IMG/VR virus record: IMGVR_UViG_3300017917_003143 | Span: 279,633-343,632 of that record | Direction: 5' to 3' (one strand) | DNA: 64,000 bases | Shown: positions 4,498-27,585 of the stretch, in pieces | Layout of the letters: the number at the start of each line of letters is the position of its first letter | Position numbering within the stretch: position 1 is the stretch's first letter | Position numbers and translations under genes: made by a program | The notes under the pieces: model-generated | Databases searched by the model: none | The model's input: only the letters and a program-made list of their open reading frames with translations | Told to the model about the DNA's origin: nothing

Positions 4498-4508
4498 TAA
4501 ATAATATT

Positions 4509-4727: not shown

Positions 4728-4742
4728 AGCAGGTCTTATCTC

Positions 4743-4770: not shown

Positions 4771-4840
4771 ACCCCATAAACCGCATAGATTTTGACGTGT
4801 GTCGTAAATATCACACAGAGCCATAACTTGGAGGAACCTC

Positions 4841-7419: not shown

Positions 7420-7444
7420 TCTTAGGAAGGAAGAAGGAGACATT

Positions 7445-11231: not shown

Positions 11232-11266
11232 AAAATCCTCACAGCTATATACTGTGAGGATTTTTT
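11232..11266 (+). terminator. Terminator hairpin
   Basis: AAAATCCTCACAG-CTATATA-CTGTGAGGATTTT, 13-bp stem plus T tract. Confidence 0.85.
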
Positions 11267-11854
11267 ATGACTACAGCATTTGTATTAGGCAACGGCCGCA
11301 GCCGACAAACAGTTGATCTTGAACAGCTCAAACAGCGTGGGCCAGTCTATGCTTGCAACGCTATCTACAGAGAGTTCACGCCCACTGTGCTTGTGGCCAC
11401 CGATCGGCCCATAGCAGAAGCCATACAAAATTCAGGCTACAGTTTGCAAAACAGATTCCACACACGTCAGCCACTGCCCAATCTAGGTGCCCTGCCGTTG
11501 GATTCAAGATATCGAGGATTTAGTTCTGGGCCCAATGCTGTGGCCCTGGCCTGCAAAGATGGATTCCAGCGTATTTTTATGTTGGGATTTGATCTTGGAA
11601 CTACAAACGGACAGTTCAACAATCTTTACGCTGACACAGAATTTTACAAAAAAAGTTCAGCGCCGCCTACATTCAGCGGAAACTGGGTGAAACAGATAGT
11701 GCAACTGGCCAACGAGTACTCGACCAGAGAATTTATACGGGTAATGGGCCCTGAATCAGCCATGATACCCAGTTTTAACAACATTAAAAATCTACGTGAG
11801 ATGGCAATTCTGGAATTCAAAGACCTGCTAAATACATCAAAAGGCTTGCTATGA
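11267..11854 (+). CDS. CstII/Maf(DUF115)-like Rossmann-fold transferase
   Basis: AFVLGNGRSR...VYACNAIY...VLVATD...SSGPNAVALA...GFQRIFMLGFD, echoing the GNGPS / CN / SG..A..LG...I.L.G.D pattern of GT42/Maf proteins. Confidence 0.55.
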   Translation: MTTAFVLGNGRSRQTVDLEQLKQRGPVYACNAIYREFTPTVLVATDRPIAEAIQNSGYSLQNRFHTRQPLPNLGALPLDSRYRGFSSGPNAVALACKDGFQRIFMLGFDLGTTNGQFNNLYADTEFYKKSSAPPTFSGNWVKQIVQLANEYSTREFIRVMGPESAMIPSFNNIKNLREMAILEFKDLLNTSKGLL

Positions 11855-12477
11855 CCACTTACAAACGCATCGACGGTGATTTTTACATCCAAACTGTCTA
11901 CCCTCCTGAGCAGAAGGTTTATATCGACACGGACACGACTGTGTCTGGTAACTTGGTCGTCCAGGGTAATTTGACCTACATCAATGTTTCTGAGCTCAAC
12001 GTTACAGATCCGTTTATTTTGGTCAACGCTTCCAATACAGGAACATATCAATCAAACTCCGGTCTGCTCACACACAAAACCAGTTCTGACTATGCTGGTA
12101 TCAGATACAACGACAATTCAGGCGCTTGGGAAATCAGCACCAGCACTGGATCTAGCGGAACAACAGGTATATGGCAGCCTTTGATTGCAGGTGGTATCAC
12201 AGCCGCAGGCGCCAACACAGAAATACAGTACAATGATGGTGGCATTCTTGGTGCCAATGCCGCATTTACTTTTGATTATGCAAACGGCCAGATGTCGTTA
12301 GACGGTACCCTGGCCTTGGTATACAACGGTGCGACTCCATCGGCTATTGCTAACACAGCCACAGTGACATCAGATGTTCCAGGCAGTGGCGGGACAGGCA
12401 TATATTTCAACAACAACAGCAATCAAGATGAGTTGATCAGCAAGTCAAAAGCCATCGTGTTTAGCATAATATTCTAA
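11851..12477 (+). CDS. Small fibre-associated protein
   Basis: Carries the GNL..QGNLTYIN...V.DP module shared with the large fibres. Confidence 0.7.
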   Translation: MTTYKRIDGDFYIQTVYPPEQKVYIDTDTTVSGNLVVQGNLTYINVSELNVTDPFILVNASNTGTYQSNSGLLTHKTSSDYAGIRYNDNSGAWEISTSTGSSGTTGIWQPLIAGGITAAGANTEIQYNDGGILGANAAFTFDYANGQMSLDGTLALVYNGATPSAIANTATVTSDVPGSGGTGIYFNNNSNQDELISKSKAIVFSIIF

Positions 12478-12487
12478 GGAAAATAAA

Positions 12488-12802
12488 ATGACGATTCAAG
12501 TAGGAAACGTAACCACATCAGCCGCATCAGTCTACACCAGCGTTGGTAACACAGCTATCACTTTTTTGAGTTTGTGTAACTATACTGCAGGCAACGTGGC
12601 AGCCAATGTTTATGTAGTGCCCAATGGTGATACTGCAGGCAATGACAATGTGATCATCAACAATATTACCATAACTGTAGGCGATACATATCAGCTCTAT
12701 GCTGGTGCAGAAAAACTTTTGTTGGAAAACGGTGACTCAGTTCAAGTTGACGCCAATGCTAACAATGCAATCACTACAGTCACAAGTTACACTTCAATCT
12801 AA
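12488..12802 (+). CDS. Hypothetical virion protein (beta-rich, 104 aa)
   Basis: SD AAGGA; T/N/V-rich; translationally coupled to next gene. Confidence 0.7.
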   Translation: MTIQVGNVTTSAASVYTSVGNTAITFLSLCNYTAGNVAANVYVVPNGDTAGNDNVIINNITITVGDTYQLYAGAEKLLLENGDSVQVDANANNAITTVTSYTSI

Positions 12803-13224
12803 TGGGATACTTTGTCAAAAATCGCAGGCTACAGAGTGGCAGCTCAAGCATCGTAGTTCCGTCAGGTGATTCTGCTGATCGACCCGAAGCTCCGGTTTTT
12901 GGCAGTTTTCGTTACAACACAGACATAGGTACTTTGGAATTTTTCAACGGAACTGTGTTCAAGCAAGTTGGCCTGGGTGGCGAGCTCAATGTTGATGTTT
13001 ATTCAGCCACTGGCGACGGTTCCACTGTTACTTTTACTATTGGCAATACCACAGCGATCAGTGCAGATGATCAAGTCATCGTGTTTGTAGGTTCTATCTA
13101 TCAAGCACCTACTGCCAATTACACCATCACAGGTGCTGGGTACGATATCACATTTGGGTCTGCTCCTCCTGACGGTGAACCCATCAATATCATACGAAAT
13201 CTGGTAGCTCCCTCCACGCCCTAA
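12802..13224 (+). CDS. Stand-alone fibre module protein
   Basis: VP.G..A.RP...G..R.N...LE..G and GDG.T..FT...Q.P...Y...ITF..AP match internal modules of the 13252 and 17925 fibres. Confidence 0.7.
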   Translation: MGYFVKNRRLQSGSSSIVVPSGDSADRPEAPVFGSFRYNTDIGTLEFFNGTVFKQVGLGGELNVDVYSATGDGSTVTFTIGNTTAISADDQVIVFVGSIYQAPTANYTITGAGYDITFGSAPPDGEPINIIRNLVAPSTP

Positions 13225-13251
13225 ACCCATAAATACTAAAAAGGGTGATCA

Positions 13252-16200
13252 ATGGCGATTCAACGAGTTTCCGGCAACATTCTGCAGGACAACCTGCAAC
13301 GTGGTGCCAATCTAAGTATCCAGGGTAATTTAGCCTATTTTGACGTGGTTGATAACCGTGTGGGTATCAACACGAGCACACCCCTGCAAGATCTTTCGAT
13401 TGCTGGCAATCTTGGTGTTGGCAACTACATTGTTGTTGACGCTGAAGTTATTTCCAGTGCTGGCAATATTGTGTTGTTGCCCACAGGCAACGTCAGCGTA
13501 TCTAATGTTTACATACAAGATGTACTGGATCCTATCCAAGCACAAGATGCCGCTACAAAAAATTATGTTGACACATCATTAAGTTCATTCCTGACCTTTG
13601 AAGATGATGGTGCCAACACTACATCTATATCAGCTGGTGACACAGTATTCTTCAATGGCACAGCCAACGAAGTTTCAGTAGTGGTCAGCAGTCTGGCAGT
13701 GACTTTTGGTCTGCCTGATGATGTGATCGTTGGAAACTCATTGTCTGTCACTGGAAACTTTGATGCGGCCAATATCTACACCGGTGGTAACATTATCGCC
13801 ATAGGTAATATTGAAGGTGGTAATATTATTTCTGAAGGCGCCGTGATTGGCAACATACAGATCACAGGCAACATCACCGTCAACAATATTACCGTTTTAG
13901 GCAATACCACATCAAACAACGCCAGCATTGGAAACATACTCACAGTTGGTGGCAACATCACAGGTGGTAACTTGATATCCAACGCAGGTATCTATGGCAC
14001 CACAGCCAATGTCACAGGCAACGTATCAGTTGGTAACTTAACTATAACCAGCACCGCTGCCAACCGAGTGCTGTACACTGATGCTAATAAAAATATTACA
14101 ACCACTGCCAACTTCACCTTTGATGGTTCTCAGTTGGTACTCACAGGTACAGCCAATGTCAGTTCCAATGTGTTTGTTGGCAATCTCTATAGTGCGGCCT
14201 TGATCAATGCTGTAGGCAACATCACTGGATCCAATGTTATAGCCAACGGCAATGTCAATGGAAATTATGTCAACGTTACTAAGGATATCTATGCAGGCGG
14301 TAACGCTATCATTGATGGCAACTTGACAATCAATGGCGATCTGATTTATGAAAACGTCACTACACTAGCAGTTGAAGATCCAATCATCTCTTTGGGTCGT
14401 GGTGCTAACAACACTCCGTTGGTCAGCAATGATGGCAAGGACCGTGGTGAACAACTTTGGTATTATTCTGGCGCAGAAAAATCTGCGTTCATAGGGTATG
14501 ACAACTCGGCTGGCAACCTCATAGCCGCGGTAGATGTAACCATCGCCAACGAGATCGTTACAGTCAATCAGTATGGAACTTGGCAAGTTGGTAATATCTA
14601 TGCCCAAACTGCACTGATCACAGGCAATGTAAGTTTTGGAAATATTTCAACTCCAGGCCAGATATCAGCCACGGGCAACATCACCGGCGGTAATTTGATA
14701 TCCAACGCCATGGTATCAGCCGCTACCACAGTCAACGCCACGGGCAACGTCACGGGTGGTAACCTTGTTTCAAATGCGGCTATTTCTGCCGCGACTACTA
14801 TTTCTGCCACTGGTAATATCACTGGTGGCAACTTAATAAGCAACGCTAATATATCAGCATCGTCTGCTATCTTTGCCACAGGTAACATCACAGGTGGTAA
14901 TCTTGTAAGCAACGCTAATATTTCTGCCGCCAATGCTGTATTTGCTACAGGTAACATCACTGGTGGCAATTTGATATCCAACGCAGGTATCTTTGGAACC
15001 ACTGCTACCATAACTGGTAACATCATAGCTGGCAATGTTTCTACTCTGGGAGTAATCAACGTCACCGGCAATATCACCGGCGGTAACCTGATATCCAATG
15101 CCAACATATCGGCAACCAATGCTGTATTTGCTACCGGTAACGTCACTGCTGGTAATCTTGTAAGTAATGCTTCCATCTCGGCTGCTACAACAATCACAGC
15201 CGTGGGTAATATCACCGGCGGTAATCTTGTAAGCAACGCCAATATATCAGCCACTACCGCTGTATTTGCCACAGGTAACATCACTGGTGGTAATCTTGTT
15301 TCAAATGCCAATATATCAGCGGCATCGTTTATCTTTGCTACCGCTAATATAGTTGGTGGCAACCTAATATCCAATGCAAGAATAGTCGGAAATACTCTTG
15401 ACATTTATGGTGATGCACTGGTAGCTGGTAACTTGACTGTACAAGGAAACTTGACATACATCAACATTGATGATTTGAGAGTTGAGGATCCAATCATCCA
15501 GTTGGGTGGTGGTGCCAATGGTAATGCTTTGGTCACCAACGATGGTAAAGATCGTGGTACCCTACTGACCTATTACACCACAGGTCCTGGTAATGCGTTT
15601 GTTGGATGGGACAACAGTTCTGGTAACATGATTATTGCCAGCAACGTGAGCATAGCCAATGAAATTGTCACAGTCAATGCATATGGAACTTTCCAAGCTG
15701 GTAACATTTATGCTGAGAGTGCTGTCATAACAGGTAACACCAGCTTTGGTAATATTTCAACTCCAGGCCAGATATCAGCCACTGGTAACATCACTGGTGG
15801 TAACTTAATATCTAATGCCAACATATCAGCGGCATCTTTTGTATTTGCTACGGCCAACATTGTTGGTGGAAATCTCGTTTCCAATGCTAATATTTCTGCT
15901 ACCAATGCTGTGTTTGCCACAGGTAACATCACTGGTGGCAATTTGGTTTCAAATGCTTCCATTAGTGCGGCCACAACTATATCAGCCACAGGTAACATCA
16001 CTGGTGGTAATCTTGTATCCAATGCCGCAATATCTGCGGCCACTACAATCAATGCTACAGGTAACATCACAGGTGGTAATCTTGTAAGCAATGCCTCAAT
16101 CAGTGCGGCTACAACTATATCAGCTACTGGTAACATCACCGGTGGCAACATTGTGTCCAATGCTTTGGTAAGTGGAGCCAATGTACAGATTTCTACTCTG

Positions 16201-17856
16201 ACTCCTAATCGAGTGGTGTATGTTGGCACCGATGACTACTTGGTTGACTCAGCTAACTTTACCTTTAACGGTTCTAACGCCAACTTGCAAGGACAGTTGA
16301 TCGTTGATAACTTTACCATAGATGGTACAGCAATAACATCCAATGCTAACATATCAATAGCATCCAGTGTCAACGGCAACATAGCAATCACACCTAACGG
16401 TAGTGGCAATGTTGTGATAGACAACATTTCTATCTCTGACAACACTATCTATTCTACTGCTGGTAATATTGTTCTTGATCCTACTGCTAACATTGTGTTG
16501 CCAGATGAGTTGGCTAACTCTGTGCTGTATCTAACAGCTGGCAAAGAAATACAAACTGCCGCCAACTTTACATTTGATGGTGCTAATCTTGTGTTGTTGG
16601 GCCGGGCCAACATTGATAATGTCACTATAGATGGTACGACCATCAGTAGCAATGCCAATCTATCAATCACAGCCAGCTCGGGCAATTTGTTATTGACTCC
16701 TGGCACCACGGGTGTCACACAGATAAGCTCTACCACAGCACTCACAGTTCCTGTGGGTAACACAGCGCAGAGACCTGCGACACCCGATCAAGGTGCTGTA
16801 CGTTTCAACAGTTCCACTTTGGTATTAGAAGTTTGGGATGGTACGCAGTGGGATGTAGTTGGACAAGATCTGGCCATCATCACCAGCCAAACAATCAACG
16901 GCGACGGAACCACTGTAGCATTTACACTCAACGAAGATACTACATCGGGAGGTATCTTGGTCAGCATCAACGGTGTGAGCCAGATTCCAGATGTTTCGTA
17001 CGGAGTAGTTGGAAACATCATTACCTTCACAGAAGCACCGCAAGTTTCAGACGCTGTTGAAGTACGATTCCTGACACAGATACAAACAGTGACAGAAATT
17101 ACCAACACCGTAGGTAACTCTATCGTTGCTGTGGCAGCCAATGTTTCTCAAGTCAACATCACTGGAAACTTGTTGCCCACGGCCAACGTGATCTATAGTT
17201 TAGGCAACACTAGTTTAAGATGGAAAGATTTATATCTTGCAGGTAATTCTATCTATCTTGGTAATGTCATAATAACTAATGCCACAGGAAATACCGTAAG
17301 TTTCTTTGCGGCAGATGGAGTGACTCCAGCAACTATTTCCAGTGGCGGCGGGTTGAATATCGGCACAGGAAATCTCAGTGTTGGCAATATCTTCAACAAC
17401 AACGCCAACGGTGTAGGTAACATTGGTAGCTCAACTACCTATTTCAATACAGTATTTGCCAAAGCAACGTCAGCGCAATACGCTGACTTGGCCGAATACT
17501 TTGAGTCAGATCAAGAGTATGACACAGGAACAGTGATGATATTTGGCGGGTCTAAAGAAGTGACTAGATCTGTAGAGTACGCTGATCAGCGACTGGCTGG
17601 AATAGTGTCAACAGATCCTGCGTTTGTAATGAATGCAACACAGCCCAATTCTCTACCCATTGCTATGGCAGGACGTGTACCTTGCTGGGTCATTGGTCCT
17701 GTGAGCAAAGGTGACGTTCTGACTACTAGCGGCGTGCCAGGGCATGCTGTCAAGCTGTTCAATGATCACTGGAAACCCGGCGTTATTGTAGGTAAATCGC
17801 TGGAATCATGTCCTGAAGGCCACCATAAAATCATGGTTGTAGTAGGGGCCTGGTAA
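13252..17856 (+). CDS. Long repetitive fibre protein with C-terminal chaperone-like domain
   Basis: 1534 aa, 23-aa ATGNITGGNL repeats; ends YADLAEYF...GIVSTDPAFVMN...IAMAGRVP...KGD. Confidence 0.85.
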   Translation: MAIQRVSGNILQDNLQRGANLSIQGNLAYFDVVDNRVGINTSTPLQDLSIAGNLGVGNYIVVDAEVISSAGNIVLLPTGNVSVSNVYIQDVLDPIQAQDAATKNYVDTSLSSFLTFEDDGANTTSISAGDTVFFNGTANEVSVVVSSLAVTFGLPDDVIVGNSLSVTGNFDAANIYTGGNIIAIGNIEGGNIISEGAVIGNIQITGNITVNNITVLGNTTSNNASIGNILTVGGNITGGNLISNAGIYGTTANVTGNVSVGNLTITSTAANRVLYTDANKNITTTANFTFDGSQLVLTGTANVSSNVFVGNLYSAALINAVGNITGSNVIANGNVNGNYVNVTKDIYAGGNAIIDGNLTINGDLIYENVTTLAVEDPIISLGRGANNTPLVSNDGKDRGEQLWYYSGAEKSAFIGYDNSAGNLIAAVDVTIANEIVTVNQYGTWQVGNIYAQTALITGNVSFGNISTPGQISATGNITGGNLISNAMVSAATTVNATGNVTGGNLVSNAAISAATTISATGNITGGNLISNANISASSAIFATGNITGGNLVSNANISAANAVFATGNITGGNLISNAGIFGTTATITGNIIAGNVSTLGVINVTGNITGGNLISNANISATNAVFATGNVTAGNLVSNASISAATTITAVGNITGGNLVSNANISATTAVFATGNITGGNLVSNANISAASFIFATANIVGGNLISNARIVGNTLDIYGDALVAGNLTVQGNLTYINIDDLRVEDPIIQLGGGANGNALVTNDGKDRGTLLTYYTTGPGNAFVGWDNSSGNMIIASNVSIANEIVTVNAYGTFQAGNIYAESAVITGNTSFGNISTPGQISATGNITGGNLISNANISAASFVFATANIVGGNLVSNANISATNAVFATGNITGGNLVSNASISAATTISATGNITGGNLVSNAAISAATTINATGNITGGNLVSNASISAATTISATGNITGGNIVSNALVSGANVQISTLTPNRVVYVGTDDYLVDSANFTFNGSNANLQGQLIVDNFTIDGTAITSNANISIASSVNGNIAITPNGSGNVVIDNISISDNTIYSTAGNIVLDPTANIVLPDELANSVLYLTAGKEIQTAANFTFDGANLVLLGRANIDNVTIDGTTISSNANLSITASSGNLLLTPGTTGVTQISSTTALTVPVGNTAQRPATPDQGAVRFNSSTLVLEVWDGTQWDVVGQDLAIITSQTINGDGTTVAFTLNEDTTSGGILVSINGVSQIPDVSYGVVGNIITFTEAPQVSDAVEVRFLTQIQTVTEITNTVGNSIVAVAANVSQVNITGNLLPTANVIYSLGNTSLRWKDLYLAGNSIYLGNVIITNATGNTVSFFAADGVTPATISSGGGLNIGTGNLSVGNIFNNNANGVGNIGSSTTYFNTVFAKATSAQYADLAEYFESDQEYDTGTVMIFGGSKEVTRSVEYADQRLAGIVSTDPAFVMNATQPNSLPIAMAGRVPCWVIGPVSKGDVLTTSGVPGHAVKLFNDHWKPGVIVGKSLESCPEGHHKIMVVVGAW
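14668..15370 (+). repeat. 69-nt (23-aa) coding tandem repeat block 1
   Basis: ATGNITGGNL(I/V)SNA.(I/V)SA..... units; consecutive starts at 14668 and 14737 give the 69-nt period. Confidence 0.9.
15778..16170 (+). repeat. 69-nt coding tandem repeat block 2
   Basis: Same unit; preceded by a 32-nt exact duplicate (14641-14672 = 15751-15782). Confidence 0.9.
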
Positions 17857-17924
17857 AAAACTGCACACGAAACCATTTTTTAAACTGCCGCTAAATATAA
17901 TCATAGAGCGGAGCGACATGATTT

Positions 17925-20900: not shown

Positions 20901-21488
20901 ACAAGTATTGCTAACGGAACATCAAACGTACAAACATTGACATCGGGTGCTGTTACAATCAGTGCAGGTGGTAATGCTAACGTAGTTGTAGTGGCCAATG
21001 GTTCAGCCACACTCAAAGGCGACCTACTCAATGGTCAAGCCAACGGTGTGGGCAACATTGGTAACTCAACAACATACTTTAATACAGCGTTTATCAAAGC
21101 AACATCTGCACAATACGCTGACTTGGCAGAAAACTATGAGGCAGATGCCACATATGAGCCAGGCACTGTACTTTGCTTTGGTGGAGACAAGGAAGTTATG
21201 ATCTGTAATCAAGCAGATTGTACCAGTGTAGCAGGTGTAGTATCTACTAATCCTAGTTATCTAATGAACTCAGGACAAACTGGCGCACATGTGGCCGCTG
21301 TAGCATTGCAAGGTCGTGTACCAACCAAAGTCACAGGACGCATACGCAAAGGTGATTTGATGGTCAGTGCAGGCGATGGCCGCGCACGAGCCAACAACGA
21401 AGCCCGTGCAGGTACTATCATTGGTAAAGCCCTGGCAGACTTCGATGGTCAAGACGGAGTGATTGAGGTCGTTGTAGGACGAGTTTAA
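17925..21488 (+). CDS. Long repetitive fibre protein with C-terminal chaperone-like domain
   Basis: 1187 aa; same repeats and modules as 13252; ends YADLAENY...GVVSTNPSYLMN...VALQGRVP. Confidence 0.85.
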   Translation: MPITRIKNNQVTDASAGNIYLGINAAVKLQDYSITAGKIANSLVYGSDLTVTGNLTVNGQTTTIDTVSVVIEDPILYLAANQTGSPSLDIGYIGERGTSQNIAFVWDESAGEFVTVYTNDTTTNSTVTIASYANFHTNDANIGGNIVINGTSSFVGNITGNLAVTGNFRAGNIATAGQISATGNISGGNLISNAAISAATTLSVTGNANVGNLGTNIIIATGNITSSANVQAGNLIANGAVIGNVTVTGNLSLGNLSVTGVINTTGNITGGNLVSNAMVSAATTVNATGNITGGNLVSNASISAATTVNATGNITGGNLISNAAVVASGLISSGTTISATGNITGGNIISNSLIQGGNLSITGEALIAGNLTVQGNLTYINIDDLRVEDPIIQLGGGANGNALTTNDGKDRGVLMTYYTSAQGNAFMGWDNSTGNMIIAPNVSLSGEIVTVNGWGNFQSGNVFATGNITATGNIAGNFVAPGSNTQVMYNNNGLIAGDSGMTYNATTDALTVVGNITGGNLGTAGQVTATGNITGGNIITAGNVNGNGAYFTGNITTLGNINATANVIATNSGVFYGNSVTGNAALFAGVPGFTTLGSNVVVQFAGNVNNYSQINFENTNSGNRASTDYILTNDQGTDSTYFADWGIASSNHDDPTFFGDSGTKNDAYLYVVGNSSTGSGSQNVGNLILGSTNGNVKTFVGNTAQANVITTAATTGFYIEKGNLYTANITTTGSRITVNNGTADIDFAVNGTSANIFYIDAGTGTASFGTSTQTTNAIVAFNATNSILAPVGNTAQRPGTGVAGMVRFNTTTSSLEFYDGTQWVSTGTIFTVVQSQTFNGDGTTVNFTINSGYTTVSCLVSINGILQVPVTAYAVSGTTLTFTEAPAVGDLIEVREIVTTVAVKGITNANGSAVVEVSDTTNYIQTTGNIIPSGNVLYNLGSATNRFKDIYLAGNSITLGNIVLKNTSGNTLSFFGPDGTTPGTLSSNNVDTTSIANGTSNVQTLTSGAVTISAGGNANVVVVANGSATLKGDLLNGQANGVGNIGNSTTYFNTAFIKATSAQYADLAENYEADATYEPGTVLCFGGDKEVMICNQADCTSVAGVVSTNPSYLMNSGQTGAHVAAVALQGRVPTKVTGRIRKGDLMVSAGDGRARANNEARAGTIIGKALADFDGQDGVIEVVVGRV

Positions 21489-21506
21489 TCGGTGCTTCTG
21501 TACCAC

Positions 21507-21537
21507 AAAATAGGGCTACTCGTGGCCCTATTTTTTT
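21507..21537 (+). terminator. Rho-independent terminator
   Basis: AAAATAGGGC-TACTCGTG-GCCCTATTTTTTT. Confidence 0.88.
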
Positions 21538-21567
21538 CCATAAATATTGGGTAGACTAAGGTAAAAA

Positions 21568-24500
21568 ATGGGATTAACTAGACCTCGTGCCGCGCAGATA
21601 TATGACATCGACTATAAACAGGCGGTGCGTGTCATAACCACTACTAATATCACGCTGTCGGGTGGTGCGCCTACAGTGGTCGATGGTGTGACATTAAGTT
21701 TAAACGATCGTATTCTTGTCACAGGACAATCAACAGCTAGTCAAAACGGTATCTATCGCGTTAGCGTGGTTGGCACTGGTGCCAATGGTACTTGGGTAAG
21801 AACCACTGATACCAACGAAACTGGAGAGCTGTTGTCGGGTACCATTGTCATGGTCACCGAAGGTTCTACCTATGCTGACACATCTTGGAAACTTACAACC
21901 AATGATCCAATAACTATTGGAACCACAGCACTGACATTTGAGATTAACACTGGCAACGCATTTGGTGTTATCTCTGCCAATGGAACATCTGTTGTAGCAA
22001 ACTCTGCCACAGGTACAGTTACCTTTAGCACAGCCAATAACTTAATCATAACAGGTAATGCTACTTCAGACACAGTGACCTTTGAAGTCAGCCAAAGTCC
22101 TAACTTTACTGGTACAGTAAACATCAGCGGTGTTGTGGGTAGTAACCTTATACCCAGCGCCAACATCACATACAATCTTGGTAACACAACCAACCGTTGG
22201 AAAGACATTTGGCTATCTAACAGCACTATCTATCTTGGTAACGCCCAGATATCTGCCAACGCTACATCACTGATATTGACCAATCCACAAGGTGCGCAAA
22301 CGGTGCTGTCTGGAACCACTCCGGATATATCAGCATCAACTGTTACAGCCACAGGTAATATCACAGGTGGTAATCTTACAACCTCAGGAAGACTATCAGT
22401 TACAGGCAATGCCAATGTAGGTAACTTAGGCACCACCAATGCTGTATTGGCAGGTACGTTGACTGGAGTTACAACTATTTCTGCTTCGGGCAATGCCAAT
22501 GTAGGAAACATAGGTGCTACCAATGCTGTATTGGCAGGAACATTAACAGGTGTTACAACCATATCAGCATCAGGCAATGCCAACGTGGGTAACTTAGGTG
22601 CTACCAATGCTAACCTAAGCGCAATCACTGTGTCGGGCAATGCCAATGTGGGTAACATTGGTGCAACCAATGCCAACGTCACTGCTATCACAGCTACTGG
22701 CAATGCCAACGTGGGTAACTTGGGCTTTGGTACAGGACAGATCACAGGTACTGGTAACATCACTGGCGGTAACTTAAACATTACTGGTAACATAGTTGAT
22801 ACCGGTGCATTATTTTTAATCACTGGATCCAGCGGCAATGTTACTTTAGCCCCTAATGGATCTAATGTAGTTGTAGCAACAACTACTGGTGCCAACATCA
22901 CAGGCACACTCAATGCCACTGGCAATGCCAACGTTGGTAATCTTGGTGCTACCAATGCGGTACTAGCTGGATCGCTGACAGGCGTAACAACAATATCTGC
23001 TTCAGGCAATGCCAACGTAGGTAACTTAGGTGCTACCAACGCTAACTTAACAGCTATCACAGCCACTGGCAACGCCAACGTGGGCAATCTTGGCACAGCT
23101 GGATTGATCGTTGCCACAGGTAACGTCACAGGTGGCAATCTTGTAACAGCAGGTCAAGTAACAGCGTCTGGTAATATCACAGGCAACTACTTGTTGGCCA
23201 ATATTACCTTTGCCAGCGGCTACAATACTACCAAATTATTCAACGGAACCTCAGAAGCCAACATTGGTACATCGGGCGGCAATGCCAACATTACCATTGG
23301 CGGAGTTTCCAATGTCGCTGTGTTTAGTACAGCAGGTGCCAATATCACAGGCACATTGGGTGTCACGGGCAATATCACAGGCGGCAACCTATCAGGTACA
23401 TTGGTCACTGGTACATTAACCACAGCCGCTCAACCCAACATTACATCTGTTGGTACACTGACTAGTGTGTCGGTAACAGGCAACGTGTCAGGTGGCAATC
23501 TGGTCACAACAGGTACAGTGTCAACAGGTACACTGACTACAACAGGAAACGCCACTGTCGCTGGCAACCTTACGGTCAGCGGTAATGTTATATCGGTCAA
23601 CGTCACAAATTTAAACGTAGTCGACCCAATCATTGGAGTTGGCCGAGGAGCCAATGACTCACCACTCACTACCAATGATGGTAAAGATCGAGGTGAACAA
23701 CTTTGGTATTATACCACTTCTGAACAGTCGGCATTTATTGGTTATAAAAACTCTACTGGCAAACTCATAGCCGCAACCAATGTTTCTATTTCCAACGAAG
23801 TAGTCACTGTAAACAGCTATGGTAACCTGGTTGTTGGTGGACTTGAATCCACAACTATATCTTCAAGTGGTAATGCCAACGTCGGTAACTTAGGCACAGC
23901 AGGACAAATTACTGCCACTGGCAATATCACTGGCGGTAACTTAACAACAGCTGGCAACATCACAGGCAACTACTTGTTGGCCAATATTACTTTTGCCAGT
24001 GGATACAATACAACTAGACTATTTAATGGTACGTCAGAAGCCAACATTGGTACATCAGGTGGTAACTTATCTGTAACTATTGGCGGAACAAGCAACGTCA
24101 TGGTTGTTTCTTCGTCTGGTGCCGCTATCACAGGAACGCTAACATCAAGCGGTAACGCCAACGTTGGTAACTTAGGTACTGTAGGGTTGATTGTTGCCAC
24201 AGGTAATGTTACAGGCGGTAATATTGTAACAACAGGTTTGGTCAGCACTGCTACATTGTCTGCCACTGGTAATGCTAATGTAGGCAACTTGGGTGCCACC
24301 AATGCCAACTTAACAGCTATTACTGCCACTGGTAATGCCAATGTGGGCAACTTGGGTACCGCTGGACAAGTCACTGCTACAGGCAATGTCACAGGTGGTA
24401 ACTTGATTACCACAGGCTTGGTATCTATTGGAACTACCCTAAGTGTCACAGGCAATGCCAACGTTGGTAACCTAGGATTTGGCACAGGTCAAATCACAGG

Positions 24501-25248
24501 TACTGGTAACATCACTGGTGGTAACTTAAATCTTACAGGTGGTATATTTGACAGCACTGGTGCGCTGAACTTAACAACCACTACAGCTTCTAATATTGCT
24601 CTAGCAGTGAACAGTAGTAATATCATTGTTGCCACTGCCACTGGTGCCAACGTTACAGGTACACTCAATGCCACAGGTAATGCCAATGTGGGTAACTTAG
24701 GCACATCAGGATTGATTGTTGCTACAGGAAACATTACATCATCTGGCAATGTATCTGGCGGAAACATTTTAGGCAATGGTTATAACCTGACAGGAATCAA
24801 TACGTTTAGTACCATCGCGGTCACAGGTGCTAATACGATCACTGCTGATTCTATTGCGGACACATTGACTTTGGTAGCTGGTGCAGGTATTACCATTGTA
24901 ACCAACGATAGCACAGATACCATCACTATTGCCGCATCTACTTCGGGCAGTGAAATCTTTGTCGATGGTGCCGATTTTGGCACAGTGACAGAAGCAGTGA
25001 CGCTGAGTCAAGACTTAGGATTGATAACCCAGGCTGTTGATGCACAGAGCGACCTTGGCGAGATTGTTACATCGGGTGTTTTCTACCCAACTCAGTTGGT
25101 GCTACCAAGCTACACAGTCGCAACACTGCCCAGTGCTACGATTCCAGCACAGTTTATCTACGTTAGCAACGCTACAGGCGGTGCTATCACAGCTTTTAGT
25201 GACGGAACTAACTGGCGCCGCACCAGCGATAGAAGCATCATTAACTAA
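21568..25248 (+). CDS. Long repetitive fibre protein
   Basis: 1226 aa; N-terminal VRVITTTNITLSG...DGV.L..NDRILV.GQ....QNGIY docking-type motif; 17/21/28-aa GNANVGNLG repeats. Confidence 0.85.
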   Translation: MGLTRPRAAQIYDIDYKQAVRVITTTNITLSGGAPTVVDGVTLSLNDRILVTGQSTASQNGIYRVSVVGTGANGTWVRTTDTNETGELLSGTIVMVTEGSTYADTSWKLTTNDPITIGTTALTFEINTGNAFGVISANGTSVVANSATGTVTFSTANNLIITGNATSDTVTFEVSQSPNFTGTVNISGVVGSNLIPSANITYNLGNTTNRWKDIWLSNSTIYLGNAQISANATSLILTNPQGAQTVLSGTTPDISASTVTATGNITGGNLTTSGRLSVTGNANVGNLGTTNAVLAGTLTGVTTISASGNANVGNIGATNAVLAGTLTGVTTISASGNANVGNLGATNANLSAITVSGNANVGNIGATNANVTAITATGNANVGNLGFGTGQITGTGNITGGNLNITGNIVDTGALFLITGSSGNVTLAPNGSNVVVATTTGANITGTLNATGNANVGNLGATNAVLAGSLTGVTTISASGNANVGNLGATNANLTAITATGNANVGNLGTAGLIVATGNVTGGNLVTAGQVTASGNITGNYLLANITFASGYNTTKLFNGTSEANIGTSGGNANITIGGVSNVAVFSTAGANITGTLGVTGNITGGNLSGTLVTGTLTTAAQPNITSVGTLTSVSVTGNVSGGNLVTTGTVSTGTLTTTGNATVAGNLTVSGNVISVNVTNLNVVDPIIGVGRGANDSPLTTNDGKDRGEQLWYYTTSEQSAFIGYKNSTGKLIAATNVSISNEVVTVNSYGNLVVGGLESTTISSSGNANVGNLGTAGQITATGNITGGNLTTAGNITGNYLLANITFASGYNTTRLFNGTSEANIGTSGGNLSVTIGGTSNVMVVSSSGAAITGTLTSSGNANVGNLGTVGLIVATGNVTGGNIVTTGLVSTATLSATGNANVGNLGATNANLTAITATGNANVGNLGTAGQVTATGNVTGGNLITTGLVSIGTTLSVTGNANVGNLGFGTGQITGTGNITGGNLNLTGGIFDSTGALNLTTTTASNIALAVNSSNIIVATATGANVTGTLNATGNANVGNLGTSGLIVATGNITSSGNVSGGNILGNGYNLTGINTFSTIAVTGANTITADSIADTLTLVAGAGITIVTNDSTDTITIAASTSGSEIFVDGADFGTVTEAVTLSQDLGLITQAVDAQSDLGEIVTSGVFYPTQLVLPSYTVATLPSATIPAQFIYVSNATGGAITAFSDGTNWRRTSDRSIIN
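22400..24770 (+). repeat. Coding repeats GNANVGNLG / GNITGGNL, plus an internal block duplication (23170-23280 vs 23953-24063)
   Basis: Direct inspection of protein and DNA. Confidence 0.85.
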
Positions 25249-25271
25249 TAAATATGATACAGGAATAACAC

Positions 25272-26489
25272 ATGTCAACCCAGATACAATACCGCAGAGG
25301 ATCCAGCTCACAAACAGCCAGCTTTACAGGTGCGTTGGGCGAAATTACCGTTGATACCACTAATAAAGTAGTGGTAGTTCATGACGGAGCCACACTGGGT
25401 GGATTTAGCGGAGTTGGTACTACTGCTACTCAAACGCTGACAAACAAAACACTACAAAGTGCTGTTTTAACAGGCACACTCACAGCCAACGGTGGTACAG
25501 GATCTAGTGGACAATTTTTATCTAGTACAGGCACAGGCGTAGCCTGGGCTACAGTTGACGCTACCAGCATAGCCAACGGTACTTCTGCAATAACTGTCAT
25601 TGCGTCAGGCGGTAATATTCGTGCTAACGTAGGCGGCGCAACCAATACTACATTTACTGCTACTGAAGCCAACGTCAGTGCCAACCTTACTTGTACCGCC
25701 CAGACTGGTCTTGGAACAGCACCTACCACAGCCGCTGTGACCATTGGTGGTAATGAAACAGCTACCAGTTGGACTACCAATGGTATTGGTTTAAGAATCA
25801 ATGCGGCAACTTACACGGATTCAGGCACACCGGCTGCCGGCACAGCCGCATCAAATCATATACATGCTATTGCTCAAGGTACTTTGGCTGCTACCAACGG
25901 CACTGTTACTACTACCAACGCCGCAACATTATACATCGCTGGTGCACCAGTAGCCGGTAGTAATATGACTATTACTAATCCGTATGCCATGCAGATTGCC
26001 GCAGGTAACTTTATAACAGCTGGTAACATTTTAGCGGCATCTAACAATACCAGCAACATCGGTACATCATCTACCAAGTTTGGTAACATTTTTGGTGTCA
26101 CAGTCAATGCCACTTACGCTGACTTGGCCGAACATTACACCACTGATGCTGAATATGAACCAGGTACTGTATTGATATTTGGTGGAGACAAAGAAGTTAC
26201 ACAAAGCACAACGAGCCACGATCCAGCAGTGGCAGGAGTAGTTTCAACCAATCCAGCTTATGTCATGAACATTGATCTGCAAGGTGGTGTAGCAGTAGCA
26301 TTGACCGGACGAGTTCCATGCCGTGTGGTAGGAAAGATAAAGAAAGGTGATTTGTTGGTTACCAGCGCCATTCCTGGTACTGCAACCAAGATGGATACCT
26401 TTGTTCCAGGTAGTGTCATTGGCAAAGCATTGGAAAACTATGACAGTGAAACGCCAGGTAAAATTGAAGTGGTGGTGGGAAGATTATGA
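25272..26489 (+). CDS. Short fibre/receptor-binding protein (Mtd-N-like N-terminus, chaperone-like C-terminus)
   Basis: QIQYRRG...FTGALGEITVDT...VVHDG.T.GG N-terminus; YADLAEHY...GVVSTNPAYVMN...VALTGRVP C-terminus. Confidence 0.8.
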   Translation: MSTQIQYRRGSSSQTASFTGALGEITVDTTNKVVVVHDGATLGGFSGVGTTATQTLTNKTLQSAVLTGTLTANGGTGSSGQFLSSTGTGVAWATVDATSIANGTSAITVIASGGNIRANVGGATNTTFTATEANVSANLTCTAQTGLGTAPTTAAVTIGGNETATSWTTNGIGLRINAATYTDSGTPAAGTAASNHIHAIAQGTLAATNGTVTTTNAATLYIAGAPVAGSNMTITNPYAMQIAAGNFITAGNILAASNNTSNIGTSSTKFGNIFGVTVNATYADLAEHYTTDAEYEPGTVLIFGGDKEVTQSTTSHDPAVAGVVSTNPAYVMNIDLQGGVAVALTGRVPCRVVGKIKKGDLLVTSAIPGTATKMDTFVPGSVIGKALENYDSETPGKIEVVVGRL

Positions 26490-27160
26490 TCAATAAAGAA
26501 CGTTACAGAGCAGACTACAGCGGTGAATTTGTGATTACAAAGATCATCTATAGAGATGGACAAAAAATCACAGAAAAAGAATACATTGAAAATCCCATCA
26601 TCAACCAACATATTTCGGGCAGAGCTGTTGTGATTGGAAACGGGCATAGTCTACGCAATGATGTAGTGACTGCCATAGCCAATCACGGTGGCGGATTGTT
26701 AGGACAGAAAAAACTACAAACCTATGGATGCGAAGGTCTTTGGAAGAAGATGCATTTGGATTTCTGTGTTGAATACGACATTCCAACTCTCAATGAAATA
26801 GTGAGTTCAGGATATGCAGAACGCTCAGTAGTCTATACGCTTACCACAAACTGTTTAAAAATGCCTGGAGAGTTCTATCTTATTCCTTACTGTGTTAGAT
26901 TGGCGCCACCAGCGGCAGCCGCGTATCTTGCCGCATTTGACGGACACCAAGAAATTTTCTTGTTAGGCGTAGATGGAACTACGACCGAACACCACATCGA
27001 TCACAAGCATATAATTGACATCAAACAAGTGCTTGCGGCCTATCCAAACACCAAGTTTTATTTTGTTACAGATGGTGCTGATCCACACAACGAGTGGAGA
27101 GCATTTAGAAATGCAGAAGTTATGGACTATAGACAGTTTATACTTCACTGTGATGTCTGA
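26486..27160 (+). CDS. CstII/Maf-like transferase, paralog of 11267
   Basis: AVVIGNGHSLR...TYGC...AAAYLAAFDGHQEIFLLGVDG; ATGA-coupled to the last fibre gene. Confidence 0.55.
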   Translation: MINKERYRADYSGEFVITKIIYRDGQKITEKEYIENPIINQHISGRAVVIGNGHSLRNDVVTAIANHGGGLLGQKKLQTYGCEGLWKKMHLDFCVEYDIPTLNEIVSSGYAERSVVYTLTTNCLKMPGEFYLIPYCVRLAPPAAAAYLAAFDGHQEIFLLGVDGTTTEHHIDHKHIIDIKQVLAAYPNTKFYFVTDGADPHNEWRAFRNAEVMDYRQFILHCDV

Positions 27161-27585
27161 TACTGTTGTTGAACAGTCGACATCTTTTGTTTGACTTCTT
27201 CAAAGTTTACAGTAGACCATAAGCCAGGATGCAGTGGTCTTGGCCATGTGTTGGAATCAATCCATGCCCAGCCTTGATGTTCATCATTGAGTGTAGGAGT
27301 AAACTCTCCAGCTACACTACAAAAGAACGTATGATAAGAAAAATTTCCGTCAGGGCTGGTAAATTTTTCAATTGGTACCAACTTGATTTCGTTGGGCCAA
27401 AATCCTAATTCTTCAACACACTCTCTTTTGATCGTTTCTAACAATGTTTCATTGGATCTAGCCTTGCCGCCAGGAAGGCCCCAGGTACCGGGATTTCTGT
27501 CGTCATTGCGTAGTAGATAGAGATATCTATCAGTGGATATGCTATAAAACCAAACTCCGACTGCGTTCAAAGGACCAAACTCCAT
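27145..27585 (-). CDS. NUDIX hydrolase
   Basis: WGLPGGKARSNETLLETIKRECVEELG Nudix box. Confidence 0.9.
   Translation of the reverse strand: MEFGPLNAVGVWFYSISTDRYLYLLRNDDRNPGTWGLPGGKARSNETLLETIKRECVEELGFWPNEIKLVPIEKFTSPDGNFSYHTFFCSVAGEFTPTLNDEHQGWAWIDSNTWPRPLHPGLWSTVNFEEVKQKMSTVQQQYQTSQ

What the first reader, a model, noticed from the sequence alone, without database searches (positions are those of the whole stretch)
11267..27160. Two CstII/Maf-like transferase genes bracket the fibre array: candidate fibre glycosylation system
Seen: paralogs 11267-11854 and 26486-27160 are the genes immediately before and after the fibre array (11851-26489), each overlapping the adjacent fibre gene by ATGA. 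Both show the GNG.S / C.. / A..LA..G...I.LLG.D pattern, and the fibres are very Ser/Thr-rich. Knowledge: this pattern is typical of GT42 sialyltransferases (Campylobacter CstII) and Maf/DUF115 proteins, which transfer CMP-activated nonulosonic sugars; Maf proteins O-glycosylate flagellin. Inference: the phage may glycosylate its own fibres, for receptor mimicry, protease shielding or host-range tuning.
Basis: partly seen in the sequence, partly recalled or inferred. Interest (0 to 1): 0.82.

Follow-up and report, generated by a model that had tools for sequence, protein, structure and literature searches.

The report
Sialyltransferase-like genes flanking phage fibres
Two small, distantly related genes that bracket the tail-fibre genes of an uncultured 344-kb T4-like jumbo phage belong to the enzyme superfamily that attaches sialic-acid-like sugars, so the phage may sugar-coat its fibres, but only the first gene looks like a working enzyme and no glycan has been shown.

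Summary
ORF A (11267-11854, 195 aa) and ORF B (26486-27160, 224 aa) are real, distantly paralogous genes (hhalign E 1.4e-21). Each shares an ATGA stop/start overlap with the adjacent fibre-module gene.

The fold assignment also holds. Family profiles hit only GT42 sialyltransferases in the PDB (E 4e-8 to 1e-6). AlphaFold models match CstI/CstII and the DUF115 enzyme MptE well above background (Z 9-11).

The order MCP-A-[fibre array]-B-NUDIX-gp15 is conserved in about 160 metagenomic loci. It recurs in outline in the distant jumbo phage XacN1, whose virions stain for glycoprotein.

Three refinements are needed:
- Only family A keeps the full donor-site motif set. The window's B lineage has lost most of it and the about 20-aa lid, although deeper B-type relatives keep both.
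- The GT42 catalytic histidine is absent from both, and neither reaches a Pfam threshold.
- A-like genes sit away from fibres in other phage lineages.

Fibre glycosylation is therefore a reasonable but untested hypothesis. Most likely A is a CMP-ulosonic-acid transferase acting on virion proteins, and B is a degenerate partner. The phage family itself is uncharacterised.

The parts
11238..11266 (+). Conserved 13-bp hairpin plus T-run ending at the ATG of ORF A. It probably terminates the upstream head-module transcript, and its 3' arm contains A's Shine-Dalgarno sequence (GAGGA).
   Evidence: RNA fold -20.9 kcal/mol, z -5.7. The structure is kept in about 83 related loci with many compensatory stem changes.
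11267..11854 (+). ORF A, 195 aa. A single-domain GT42/DUF115-superfamily protein that keeps a complete set of donor-site motifs (GNGxSR, YxCN..YR, ATD, SSGPNA, GfDlG) and a lid with FNN.Y...FYK. It is the putative CMP-ulosonic-acid transferase.
11851..12477 (+). 208-aa conserved protein, S+T 21.6%, the first gene of the fibre module. Its start overlaps the stop of A (ATGA). A TAAATAC late-promoter-like motif lies 22 nt upstream, inside A.
12488..12802 (+). 104-aa conserved small protein of the fibre module.
12802..13224 (+). 140-aa conserved protein resembling the N-terminal parts of phage fibre and virion proteins.
13252..17856 (+). Fibre protein, 1534 aa, with a FapA-type beta-solenoid, 23-aa repeats and a C-terminal domain matching phrog_22593.
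17925..21488 (+). Fibre protein, 1187 aa, with a Phage_T7_tail-like segment and the same C-terminal phrog_22593 domain.
21568..25248 (+). Fibre protein, 1226 aa (tail-fibre phrog_11518), S+T 26%.
25272..26489 (+). Last fibre protein, 405 aa, with an Mtd_N N-terminus and a C-terminal phrog_22593 domain. Its stop overlaps the start of B.
26486..27160 (+). ORF B, 224 aa. A divergent paralog of A with a conserved 45-aa N-terminal beta-hairpin extension and an HGGGLLG insertion. It has no lid, and its donor-site motifs are degenerate across the family.
27145..27585 (-). Convergent NUDIX hydrolase gene, followed by gp15 (tail sheath stabiliser). This is the conserved downstream boundary of the module.

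Best explanation
ORF A is a minimal, single-domain member of the superfamily that unites GT42 sialyltransferases (CstI/CstII), Maf/DUF115 flagellin nonulosonic-acid transferases and WaaZ-type Kdo transferases.

It sits in the structural-gene block and is translationally coupled to the first fibre-module gene. Late expression is inferred from that position and from nearby late-promoter-like motifs, and has not been shown.

It most likely binds a CMP-activated 2-keto-3-deoxy sugar acid in the pocket formed by GNGxSR, CN..Y, SSG and G.D under a flexible NN.Y..Y lid. It would transfer that sugar in the cytoplasm to Ser/Thr on virion proteins before assembly. In this clade the neighbouring fibre proteins are the likeliest acceptors. 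The simplest donor would be CMP-Kdo from the presumed Gram-negative host, or a nonulosonic acid if one is available.

ORF B descends from a second transferase of the same kind that marked the distal end of the fibre array. In the window's lineage it has lost the lid and most donor-binding residues but keeps its own invariant polar residues. It is therefore more likely a non-catalytic partner or targeting subunit, or an enzyme with altered chemistry, than a second sialyltransferase.

Shown: the genes, their paralogy, the fold, homology to GT42, the pattern of motif conservation and loss, and the conserved gene order.

Inferred: enzymatic activity, donor, acceptor and timing of expression.
For: Homology:
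- The A-family profile A5 hits only GT42 enzymes in the PDB: 9c08 at 4e-8, CstII at 6.5e-8, CstI at 1.5e-6.
- The mixed A3 profile gives CstII 3e-8 over nearly the full length, against MptE at 0.71.
- PHROG 4603, labelled 'alpha-2,3-sialyltransferase', matches at 9e-8.

Fold:
- Foldseek top hits are CstII and CstI for both models.
- VIA Z-scores of 9.4-11.1 for CstI/II and MptE compare with no more than 6.7 for the next fold.
- DUF115 proteins in AFDB clusters match at TM 0.57-0.71, and up to 0.86 for unnamed relatives.
- A Campylobacterota Maf cluster matches B at TM 0.65.
- Atlas neighbours carry MptE-like, WaaZ_KDO_III and CST-I domains.

Active-site conservation:
- G8 N9 G10 R13 N31 G88 G107 D109 N119 are invariant, and S12 C30 Y34 D46 N118 Y121 Y127 nearly so, across 60 representatives at 29-52% identity.
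- In the HMM alignments printed, G8 N9 G10, S12, C30, N31 and Y34 align with the same-numbered residues of CstII.
- The D46...S86/87...D109 pattern has the spacing of the residues required in Maf enzymes (CbMaf D272, S334, D357; bioRxiv 10.1101/2020.06.03.131540).

Context:
- ATGA coupling.
- Conserved order MCP-g282-A-fibres-B-NUDIX-gp15.
- B abuts the last fibre gene in 73 loci.
- XacN1 has two tandem A-like genes, then a sugar-type O-methyltransferase-glycosyltransferase fusion, then four large S/T-rich proteins, then gp15. Its virions show periodate-Schiff-positive bands (PMC5852040).
- One relative has a B-type gene plus a methyltransferase inside the fibre array.
- Deeper B-type proteins keep GNGxSR, CN and the lid.
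- A tandem fusion of a canonical DUF115 domain with an A-like domain exists.
- Maf enzymes can use Kdo as well as nonulosonic acids.
Against: - There is no biochemical or proteomic evidence for this phage.
- The GT42 catalytic base (His188 in CstII, His202 in CstI; PMC4202792) has no conserved counterpart.
- Neither protein reaches the Pfam gathering score for CST-I or MptE-like, and NCBIfam finds nothing.
- Structurally, the archaeal pyrophosphokinase MptE matches as well as CstII does, and thiamin pyrophosphokinases also match B.
- A has no acceptor-recognition domain of the kind Maf proteins carry.
- No CMP-sugar synthetase was found in the 64-kb window.
- A-like genes lie between portal and prohead protease in another T4-like lineage, and between gp59 and gp32 in pelagiphages. 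The family is therefore not tied to fibres.
- Conserved gene order within one phage clade may reflect only a collinear structural module.
- PA5oct and a Vibrio jumbo phage with 67%-identical capsid proteins lack both genes.
Confidence: 0.45

Rival explanations
1. A (and ancestrally B) are genuine CMP-sugar transferases, but the acceptor is not the fibre. They would modify another virion protein such as a capsid or decoration protein, or a host envelope glycan such as the LPS core, as WaaZ and CstII do, for example to mask receptors late in infection.
For: - GT42 enzymes and WaaZ act on lipooligosaccharide, not protein (PMC4202792; Atlas WaaZ_KDO_III neighbours).
- A-like genes sit in the head module between portal and gp21 in another lineage, and away from structural genes in pelagiphages.
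- A lies at the junction with the head module, 2.6 kb after the capsid gene.
- A has no protein-acceptor domain.
Against: - In this clade a conserved terminator-like hairpin separates A from the head genes, and A is translationally coupled to the fibre module.
- B is glued to the last fibre gene in 73 loci.
- The XacN1 arrangement repeats the association with large S/T-rich tail-module proteins.
Confidence: 0.2
2. A and B are not glycosyltransferases. They would be nucleotide-dependent enzymes of the MptE / thiamin-pyrophosphokinase type, or otherwise neofunctionalised DUF115 proteins with an unknown small-molecule substrate. Their position next to the fibres would be incidental.
For: - MptE HPPK is the top VIA match for both models (Z 9.8 and 11.1), and thiamin pyrophosphokinases reach Z 8.3-9.0 for B.
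- The only credible Swiss-Prot match is MptE.
- The weak Pfam hit is to MptE-like.
- B's N-terminal hairpin aligns with the N-terminus of MptE.
- The catalytic His of GT42 is missing.
Against: - At the sequence level the family profile prefers GT42 by about 7 orders of magnitude over MptE (3e-8 against 0.71; MptE is absent at E<=1).
- The GT42 CMP-site motifs are position-for-position conserved in A.
- No pterin or thiamin genes are nearby.
- Gene neighbours and fusions in relatives are glycosyltransferases and sugar-type methyltransferases.
Confidence: 0.12
3. One or both proteins, especially B, are non-enzymatic fibre assembly or attachment factors built on a dead transferase scaffold. This would be analogous in position to the tail-fibre chaperone or adhesin genes that follow fibre genes in many phages.
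For: - B occupies the classic chaperone slot, immediately after and overlapping the last fibre gene, in 73 loci.
- B has lost GNG (N52 in 11 of 121 sequences), the C-N motif, the SSG motif, half of the G.D aspartates and the lid.
- The C-terminal 120 aa of the preceding fibre are conserved alongside B, with median 48-100% identity depending on B identity.
- B still has many invariant residues of its own.
Against: - A keeps a full catalytic-looking motif set under strong conservation.
- Deeper B-type proteins keep the motifs.
- In 3-14% of locus pairs, depending on how similar the B proteins are, the preceding fibre C-termini are unrelated.
- No known fibre chaperone has this fold (my knowledge).
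- PA5oct-type relatives assemble fibres without A or B.
Confidence: 0.18

Closest known systems
Campylobacter jejuni CstII / CstI and related GT42 lipooligosaccharide sialyltransferases (PDB 1ro7, 2p2v, 9c08)
   Same: - They are the only solved proteins found by the family profiles (E 4e-8 to 1e-6).
- They are the best Foldseek matches for both models.
- The N-terminal GNGxS and CN..Y motifs, the S-G helix cap and the G.D strand end fall at equivalent positions.
- A flexible lid follows the G.D strand in A.
   Different: - A and B are 195-224 aa, against a catalytic core of about 260-290 aa.
- The catalytic His188/His202 is absent.
- The residue at the CstII Asn51 position is an invariant Asp in A.
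- The lid sequence differs (NN.Y...Y instead of Y156/Y162) and is deleted in B.
- The Pfam CST-I score is below threshold.
- The known acceptors are glycolipids, not proteins.
Maf (motility accessory factor) flagellin nonulosonic-acid O-glycosyltransferases, Pfam PF01973 (DUF115 / MptE-like)
   Same: - Same core fold (AFDB DUF115 clusters; Atlas Maf cluster at TM 0.65 for B).
- An Asp...Ser...Asp pattern like the residues essential in Maf.
- They are encoded beside the filamentous, S/T-rich surface protein they would modify.
- Maf enzymes can use Kdo from an ordinary E. coli host.
- Maf-2 needs a separately encoded specificity factor. This is a precedent for a two-protein system.
   Different: - Maf proteins are 400-700 aa, with N-terminal and TPR or other acceptor-binding domains. 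A and B consist of the bare central domain.
- PF01973 scores 19 bits against a cut-off of 34.6 for A, and finds nothing for B.
- The proposed acceptor would be a phage fibre rather than flagellin.
WaaZ-type Kdo transferases (Pfam PF27901 WaaZ_KDO_III; CAZy GT73, from my knowledge)
   Same: - Short single-domain proteins of about 200-280 aa.
- Atlas feature neighbours of both A and B (scores 0.86-0.87).
- The donor, CMP-Kdo, is available in Gram-negative hosts without phage-encoded biosynthesis.
   Different: - The link is only a language-model and feature lead. The Pfam copy available here does not report this family.
- WaaZ acts on the LPS inner core.
MptE, archaeal 6-hydroxymethyl-7,8-dihydropterin pyrophosphokinase (PDB 8sd5)
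   Same: - Top VIA structural match for A (Z 9.8) and B (Z 11.1).
- It aligns with B's N-terminal hairpin.
- Similar size (about 215-240 aa).
   Different: - Sequence-profile similarity is insignificant (E 0.71).
- It is a kinase using ATP, in a pterin-pathway context that is absent here.
Phage- and virus-encoded virion glycosylation: XacN1 glycoprotein bands (PMC5852040), and chlorovirus PBCV-1 and mycobacteriophage capsid/tail glycosylation (my knowledge)
   Same: - Virus-encoded transferases located in or beside structural modules.
- XacN1 carries A-like genes in the equivalent slot and has periodate-Schiff-positive virion proteins.
   Different: - Those systems use GT-A/GT-B enzymes with NDP-hexoses.
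- None is reported to use a GT42/DUF115-type enzyme or a CMP-ulosonic acid.
- The XacN1 authors attributed the staining to other glycosyltransferases (ORF328, ORF334) and did not identify the glycosylated proteins.

Membership tests
GT42 sialyltransferases (Pfam PF06002 CST-I) | Score above the Pfam CST-I gathering threshold | tested here: not met
   A scores 11.4 bits against a cut-off of 25 (E 0.22), and only over residues 4-36. B has no hit. Only 2 of 60 A-like representatives reach E<0.01.
GT42 sialyltransferases (Pfam PF06002 CST-I) | Significant sequence homology to characterised GT42 enzymes | tested here: met
   Family profiles against the PDB give 9c08 at 4.1e-8, CstII at 6.5e-8 and CstI at 1.5e-6, with no other family below E 0.1. 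The A3 profile aligns CstII residues 3-214 at 3e-8.
GT42 sialyltransferases (Pfam PF06002 CST-I) | Modified GT-A / Rossmann fold of CstII | tested here: met
   Foldseek gives A to 1ro8 at E 6e-5 and B to 2p56 at E 8e-5, both with probability 1.00. VIA Z-scores are 9.4-9.5, against no more than 6.7 for unrelated folds. TM-scores are only 0.4-0.5.
GT42 sialyltransferases (Pfam PF06002 CST-I) | CMP-binding motifs: N-terminal GNGxS, C-N..Y, S-G, and the G.D strand end | tested here: met
   This is met for A and its family: the motifs are invariant or nearly so in 121 close and 60 distant sequences, and they align with the same positions of CstII. It is not met for the B family: N52 is kept in 11 of 121, the C-N and S-G motifs are lost, and D163 splits D 53 / N 50.
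GT42 sialyltransferases (Pfam PF06002 CST-I) | Catalytic general base His188 (CstII) / His202 (CstI) | tested here: not met
   No conserved His is present in family A. The aligned segment is PPT.GNW. B has His residues nearby, but they are not conserved. The role of the His is taken from PMC4202792.
GT42 sialyltransferases (Pfam PF06002 CST-I) | Lid with phosphate-binding tyrosines that closes over CMP-sugar | tested here: inconclusive
   A has a low-pLDDT insert of about 28 aa after G.D, with conserved N118 N119 Y121 Y127, but its spacing differs from CstII Y156/Y162. The insert is deleted in the window's B and most of its family, and is present in deeper B-type proteins.
GT42 sialyltransferases (Pfam PF06002 CST-I) | Transfer of sialic acid from CMP-Neu5Ac to a glycan acceptor | not testable with these tools
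   This needs an enzyme assay.
Maf / DUF115 (Pfam PF01973 MptE-like) | Score above the PF01973 gathering threshold | tested here: not met
   A scores 19.2 bits against 34.6 (residues 71-114 only). B has no hit. 5 of 60 representatives reach E<0.01. The fused relative P0274 has a separate N-terminal domain that does pass, at 49.9 bits.
Maf / DUF115 (Pfam PF01973 MptE-like) | DUF115 core fold | tested here: met
   Proteins named DUF115 in AFDB clusters match at E 1e-8 to 1e-5 and TM 0.57-0.71 by query. An Atlas Maf cluster matches B at TM 0.65 over 184 residues.
Maf / DUF115 (Pfam PF01973 MptE-like) | Essential acidic and Ser residues (M. magneticum E324/D415; CbMaf D272, S334, D357) | tested here: inconclusive
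   A has invariant D46, S86/S87 and D109, with the same Ser-to-Asp spacing of 22-23 residues. No direct alignment to a Maf sequence was made. The Maf residues are from bioRxiv 10.1101/2020.06.03.131540.
Maf / DUF115 (Pfam PF01973 MptE-like) | Multi-domain architecture with acceptor-binding domains (Maf_flag10_N, TPR) or a GlfM partner | tested here: not met
   A and B are single-domain proteins of 195 and 224 aa. B adds only a 45-aa hairpin.
MptE (archaeal HPPK) | Structural similarity to MptE | tested here: met
   8sd5 gives Z 9.8 for A and Z 11.1 for B. The top Swiss-Prot AFDB hit is the Pyrococcus HPPK.
MptE (archaeal HPPK) | Sequence homology and a pterin-biosynthesis gene context | tested here: not met
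   Profile E-value is 0.71, and MptE is absent at E<=1. No pterin or folate genes lie near A or B.
WaaZ Kdo transferase (PF27901 / GT73) | Match to the WaaZ_KDO_III model | tested here: inconclusive
   The only link is Atlas feature neighbours whose members carry PF27901 (scores 0.86-0.87). The local Pfam scan reported no such family.

The most novel reading that the evidence does not exclude
The A/B pair would be a phage-encoded O-glycosylation system that decorates tail fibres with a CMP-activated ulosonic acid (Kdo or a sialic-acid-like nonulosonic acid). A would be the minimal catalytic subunit. The degenerate paralog B, translationally coupled to the last fibre gene, would act as the acceptor-targeting or scaffolding subunit, functionally like GlfM for Maf-2. 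That would be the first sialic-acid-type glycosylation of a bacteriophage virion. It would also define a family of more than 1200 clusters of minimal protein-modifying DUF115 enzymes that is widespread in jumbo and T4-like phages.
Probability: 0.2. Interest if true: 0.85.

Novelty: new variant of a known kind. Interest (0 to 1): 0.58.

Why it matters
Glycosylation of phage virions has been reported only rarely. As far as I could find, it has never been linked to sialyltransferase/Maf-type enzymes (literature searches found nothing).

If A modifies fibres, this large phage-specific family would point to a hidden layer of receptor-binding-protein chemistry in environmental jumbo phages. The family comprises 1214 clusters at 50% identity and is unannotated in Pfam and NCBIfam. 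Such chemistry could affect adsorption, host range, protease or antibody resistance, and the interpretation of fibre structures.

The family would also offer very small (about 195 aa) ulosonic-acid transferases for glyco-engineering. The active-plus-degenerate paralog pair bracketing a hypervariable fibre cassette is a tidy system for studying how pseudoenzymes arise.

If the hypothesis is wrong, the result is still useful: these 'hypothetical proteins' can now be annotated as a GT42/DUF115-superfamily family.

Tried and rejected
- Megablast of 18 kb against 50,697 phage records found no match. The window is an uncultured phage, and by coordinates it appears to be the last 64 kb of a 343.6-kb IMG/VR contig.
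- tblastn of B against phage records found nothing. A hit only two pelagiphages and XacN1.
- The positional counterparts in PA5oct (genes 0156, 0157 and 0160) were compared with A, g208 and B. They are unrelated, so PA5oct virion proteomics cannot be transferred.
- XacN1 ORF374 is not similar to g208. It is instead a second A-like paralog.
- NCBIfam has no hit for A or B.
- A single-sequence search of XacN1 ORF375 against the PDB found nothing.
- The B-only profile against the PDB gave only spurious ankyrin/DARPin hits on the AAYLAAFDGH segment.
- The AFDB Swiss-Prot search found only MptE at modest E. No reviewed WaaZ or Maf entry surfaced.
- The sigma-70 promoter and terminator scan was not enriched over shuffles and missed the hairpin before A, because its stem extends into the T-run.
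- T4's TATAAATA motif is not enriched.
- I considered whether S/T richness marks acceptor sites. I rejected it as evidence because such composition is typical of fibres.
- I considered a DNA-hypermodification role for A and B. I rate it unlikely given their place in the structural operon, but the separate sugar-gene cluster at 54-62 kb could serve that purpose.
- Read laying and the look-up of sequencing runs were not used, because expression data for an uncultured phage would not settle function.
- No model coordinates were available to scripts. I could not test whether conserved residues cluster in 3D, or map His188 structurally.

Full report
**1. What is in the sequence**

The window carries the structural region of a T4-superfamily jumbo phage. 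Genes recognised include:
- portal (Portal_T4), prohead protease gp21 and capsid gp23 in relatives;
- gp15, gp13 and sheath in relatives;
- terminase, gp32 and a RecA-family recombinase in the window.

The capsid protein is 64-67% identical to those of Vibrio phage 2.275.O, PA5oct and Rak2-related jumbo phages. No nucleotide-level relative exists among 50,697 phage records.

An IMG/VR contig of 343,632 bp encodes a B protein identical to the window's. By coordinates the window appears to be its last 64 kb.

ORF A (11267-11854) and ORF B (26486-27160) are intact + strand ORFs.

Between A and B lie three small conserved genes (208, 104 and 140 aa) and four fibre-like genes (1534, 1187, 1226 and 405 aa). 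Their fibre-like features are:
- tail-fibre Pfam and PHROG matches;
- 23-aa shaft repeats;
- S+T of 20-26%.

**2. A and B are paralogs of the GT42/DUF115 superfamily**

The pairwise match is weak: 26% identity, E 3e-6. Profiles built from 21 homologs each align over 164 columns at E 1.4e-21.

Single-sequence Pfam hits are sub-threshold. A scores 19 bits to MptE-like and 11 bits to CST-I, and B has no hit. PHROGs places A in phrog_30607, and more weakly in phrog_4603, which is labelled 'alpha-2,3-sialyltransferase'.

Family profiles are decisive:
- An A-like profile of 60 representatives at 29-52% identity finds only GT42 sialyltransferases in the PDB: 9c08 at 4e-8, CstII at 6.5e-8 and CstI at 1.5e-6.
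- A mixed A+B+XacN1+pelagiphage profile aligns CstII nearly end to end at 3e-8. MptE scores 0.71 with the same profile.

AlphaFold models are confident (pLDDT 87 and 88). Their structural matches are:
- Foldseek top hits are CstII and CstI for both.
- VIA-align gives MptE Z 9.8 and CstII Z 9.4 for A. For B it gives MptE 11.1, CstI 9.5, CstII 9.4 and thiamin pyrophosphokinases 8.3-9.0. Unrelated folds score 6.7 or lower.
- AFDB clusters return DUF115 proteins.
- The Atlas returns a Campylobacterota Maf cluster for B, at TM 0.65.
- Language-model neighbours carry MptE-like, WaaZ_KDO_III and CST-I domains.

One of the two best structural matches, MptE, is nonetheless a kinase.

**3. Only A looks catalytically intact**

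Across 121 close sequences, family A conserves these motifs:
- LGNGxSR, YxCN..YR, ATD, SGY and TR;
- SSGPNA and GfDlG;
- a following insert of low model confidence carrying FNN.yAdT.FYK and PPT.GNW.

Across 60 distant representatives, G8 N9 G10 R13 N31 G88 G107 D109 N119 are invariant. S12 C30 Y34 D46 N118 Y121 Y127 are nearly so.

In the HMM alignments, G8/N9/G10/S12/C30/N31/Y34 coincide with the same-numbered residues of CstII. SSG...G.D coincides with CstII S132-G133...G152.D154. D46 falls at the position of CstII Asn51.

The GT42 catalytic base (His188/His202; PMC4202792) has no conserved equivalent. Maf enzymes of the same fold depend instead on two acidic residues and a Ser (bioRxiv 10.1101/2020.06.03.131540). 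A's D46, S86/87 and D109 have the matching order and Ser-to-Asp spacing. This last point is inferred and was not tested by alignment.

Family B differs. In 121 sequences:
- the Asn of GNG is kept in only 11;
- the C-N and S-G motifs are gone;
- the G.D aspartate splits D 53 / N 50;
- the lid of about 20 aa is deleted.

B does have its own invariant features:
- an N-terminal hairpin (R.dY.GE...NpI.NqHiSGRA);
- an HrGGLLg.KklQTYg insertion;
- FDGH.E;
- a C-terminal yCDv.

Deeper-branching B-type proteins occupy the same slot before NUDIX-gp15 and have the same N-terminal extension. They still carry GNGxSR, CN and the NN.Y lid. The ancestral arrangement was probably two competent enzymes, and the window's B lineage is a degenerated or repurposed copy.

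A natural fusion of a canonical DUF115 domain with an A-like domain (P0274) shows that two such domains can work within one protein.

**4. Context**

In about 160 IMG/VR loci, plus loci from other assemblies, the order is MCP-(g121, g375)-g282-A-[g208 g104 g140]-variable fibre array-B-NUDIX(-)-gp15(-). B identities in these loci range from 41 to 100%. Where both genes are visible, the A-to-B distance is 8 to 14.6 kb.

B's start abuts the stop of the last fibre gene in 73 loci, whatever that gene's length: an ATGA overlap in 35 and TAATG in 11. The C-terminal 120 residues of that gene are themselves fairly conserved.

A conserved hairpin with compensatory changes separates A from the head genes and ends at A's ATG.

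TAAATAC motifs lie 11-26 nt before several structural genes, including g208 and the first long fibre. They resemble a T4-type late promoter.

Three pieces of context favour a glycan-modifying role:
- In XacN1, two tandem A-like genes are followed by a TylF-type O-methyltransferase fused to a glycosyltransferase, then four large proteins with 22-29% S+T, then gp15 and sheath. XacN1 virions show at least two periodate-Schiff-positive bands (PMC5852040 and its Supplementary Fig. S4). The authors did not connect these observations.
- In another relative, a B-type gene and a class I methyltransferase sit inside the fibre array.
- Viral Atlas clusters fuse this fold to GT2 or methyltransferase domains.

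Three pieces of context weigh against a fibre-specific role:
- An A-like gene lies between portal and gp21 in another T4-like lineage.
- In pelagiphages, A-like genes lie between gp59 and gp32. In HTVC008M they lie beside a carbamoyltransferase and 2OG oxygenases.
- PA5oct and the Vibrio phage lack the genes altogether.

**5. Donor**

No CMP-sugar synthetase was found in the window. A separate sugar-modification cluster lies at 54-62 kb. It encodes a twitch radical SAM protein, two methyltransferases, an RfaE-domain-II-like nucleotidyltransferase fused to a cupin, a GT8 and a GT25.

The cultured phages with the most similar capsid proteins infect Gram-negative bacteria, which make CMP-Kdo (established knowledge). 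Maf enzymes can transfer Kdo. CMP-Kdo is therefore the most economical candidate donor. This is inference.

**6. Verdict**

Membership of the GT42/Maf superfamily is solid at the level of fold and homology. The proteins do not meet the defining thresholds or the catalytic-His criterion of GT42, and they lack Maf's architecture. They are best described as a distinct, phage-specific, minimal branch of that superfamily, comprising 1214 clusters at 50% identity.

My best explanation, at confidence about 0.45, is that A is an active CMP-ulosonic-acid transferase modifying virion proteins, with fibres the likeliest acceptors, and that B is a degenerate partner. Three rivals remain open: a different acceptor, a non-transferase chemistry, and a non-catalytic assembly role.

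Noticed in passing
window 11238-11266, and the equivalent position in about 83 related loci (e.g. L016, L010, L023): A perfect 13-bp hairpin plus T-run ends exactly at the ATG of ORF A (MFE -20.9 kcal/mol, z -5.7). The structure is conserved with many compensatory stem changes. The 3' arm contains the Shine-Dalgarno sequence, and the loop keeps a TA..TAC motif resembling the TAAATAC promoter-like element. It may be a terminator that doubles as a translational gate, or a promoter nested in a terminator loop.
   Followed up: partly
window 11829, 13230, 31807, 40275, 49456 (+ strand): TAAATAC occurs 7 times in the window, which is not enriched overall. Five copies lie 11-26 nt upstream of start codons of structural or late genes. 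This suggests it is the late-promoter core of this phage group (compare T4 TATAAATA).
   Followed up: partly
window 54464-62805: A cluster of sugar and modification genes: a twitch-domain radical SAM protein, a class I methyltransferase, an RfaE-domain-II-like nucleotidyltransferase fused to a mannose-6-P-isomerase-type cupin, a GT8, an FkbM methyltransferase, a GT25 and unknowns. It could build a glycan for virion or host surfaces, or hypermodify DNA.
   Followed up: partly
L169 (XacN1, AP018399.1 249342-264341): XacN1 was described as lacking tail-fibre homologs. Four large S/T-rich ORFs (369-372) occupy the slot before gp15, headed by two A-like genes and a methyltransferase-glycosyltransferase fusion. 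They are candidates for the unidentified periodate-Schiff-positive virion proteins.
   Followed up: partly
L005 (HTVC008M 752-4983) and L170 (Mosig 7001-7846): Pelagiphage A-like genes lie between the gp59 and gp32 genes. In HTVC008M two copies bracket a carbamoyltransferase, two 2OG-Fe(II) oxygenases and a DUF6552 gene. This is another 'bracketing' arrangement, around tailoring enzymes rather than fibres.
   Followed up: partly
window 13252-26489: Three of the four fibre proteins (1534, 1187 and 405 aa) share a C-terminal domain matching phrog_22593. The array is mosaic among relatives, with segments shuffled in different orders between the conserved A and B anchors.
   Followed up: no
L171 4278-5585 (P0274): A 435-aa protein that fuses a canonical MptE-like/DUF115 domain (above the Pfam threshold) to an A-like domain. 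It is a natural tandem of the two kinds of domain.
   Followed up: partly
window 47306-47851 (- strand): An HNH endonuclease gene lies immediately upstream of the large terminase gene and on the opposite strand.
   Followed up: no
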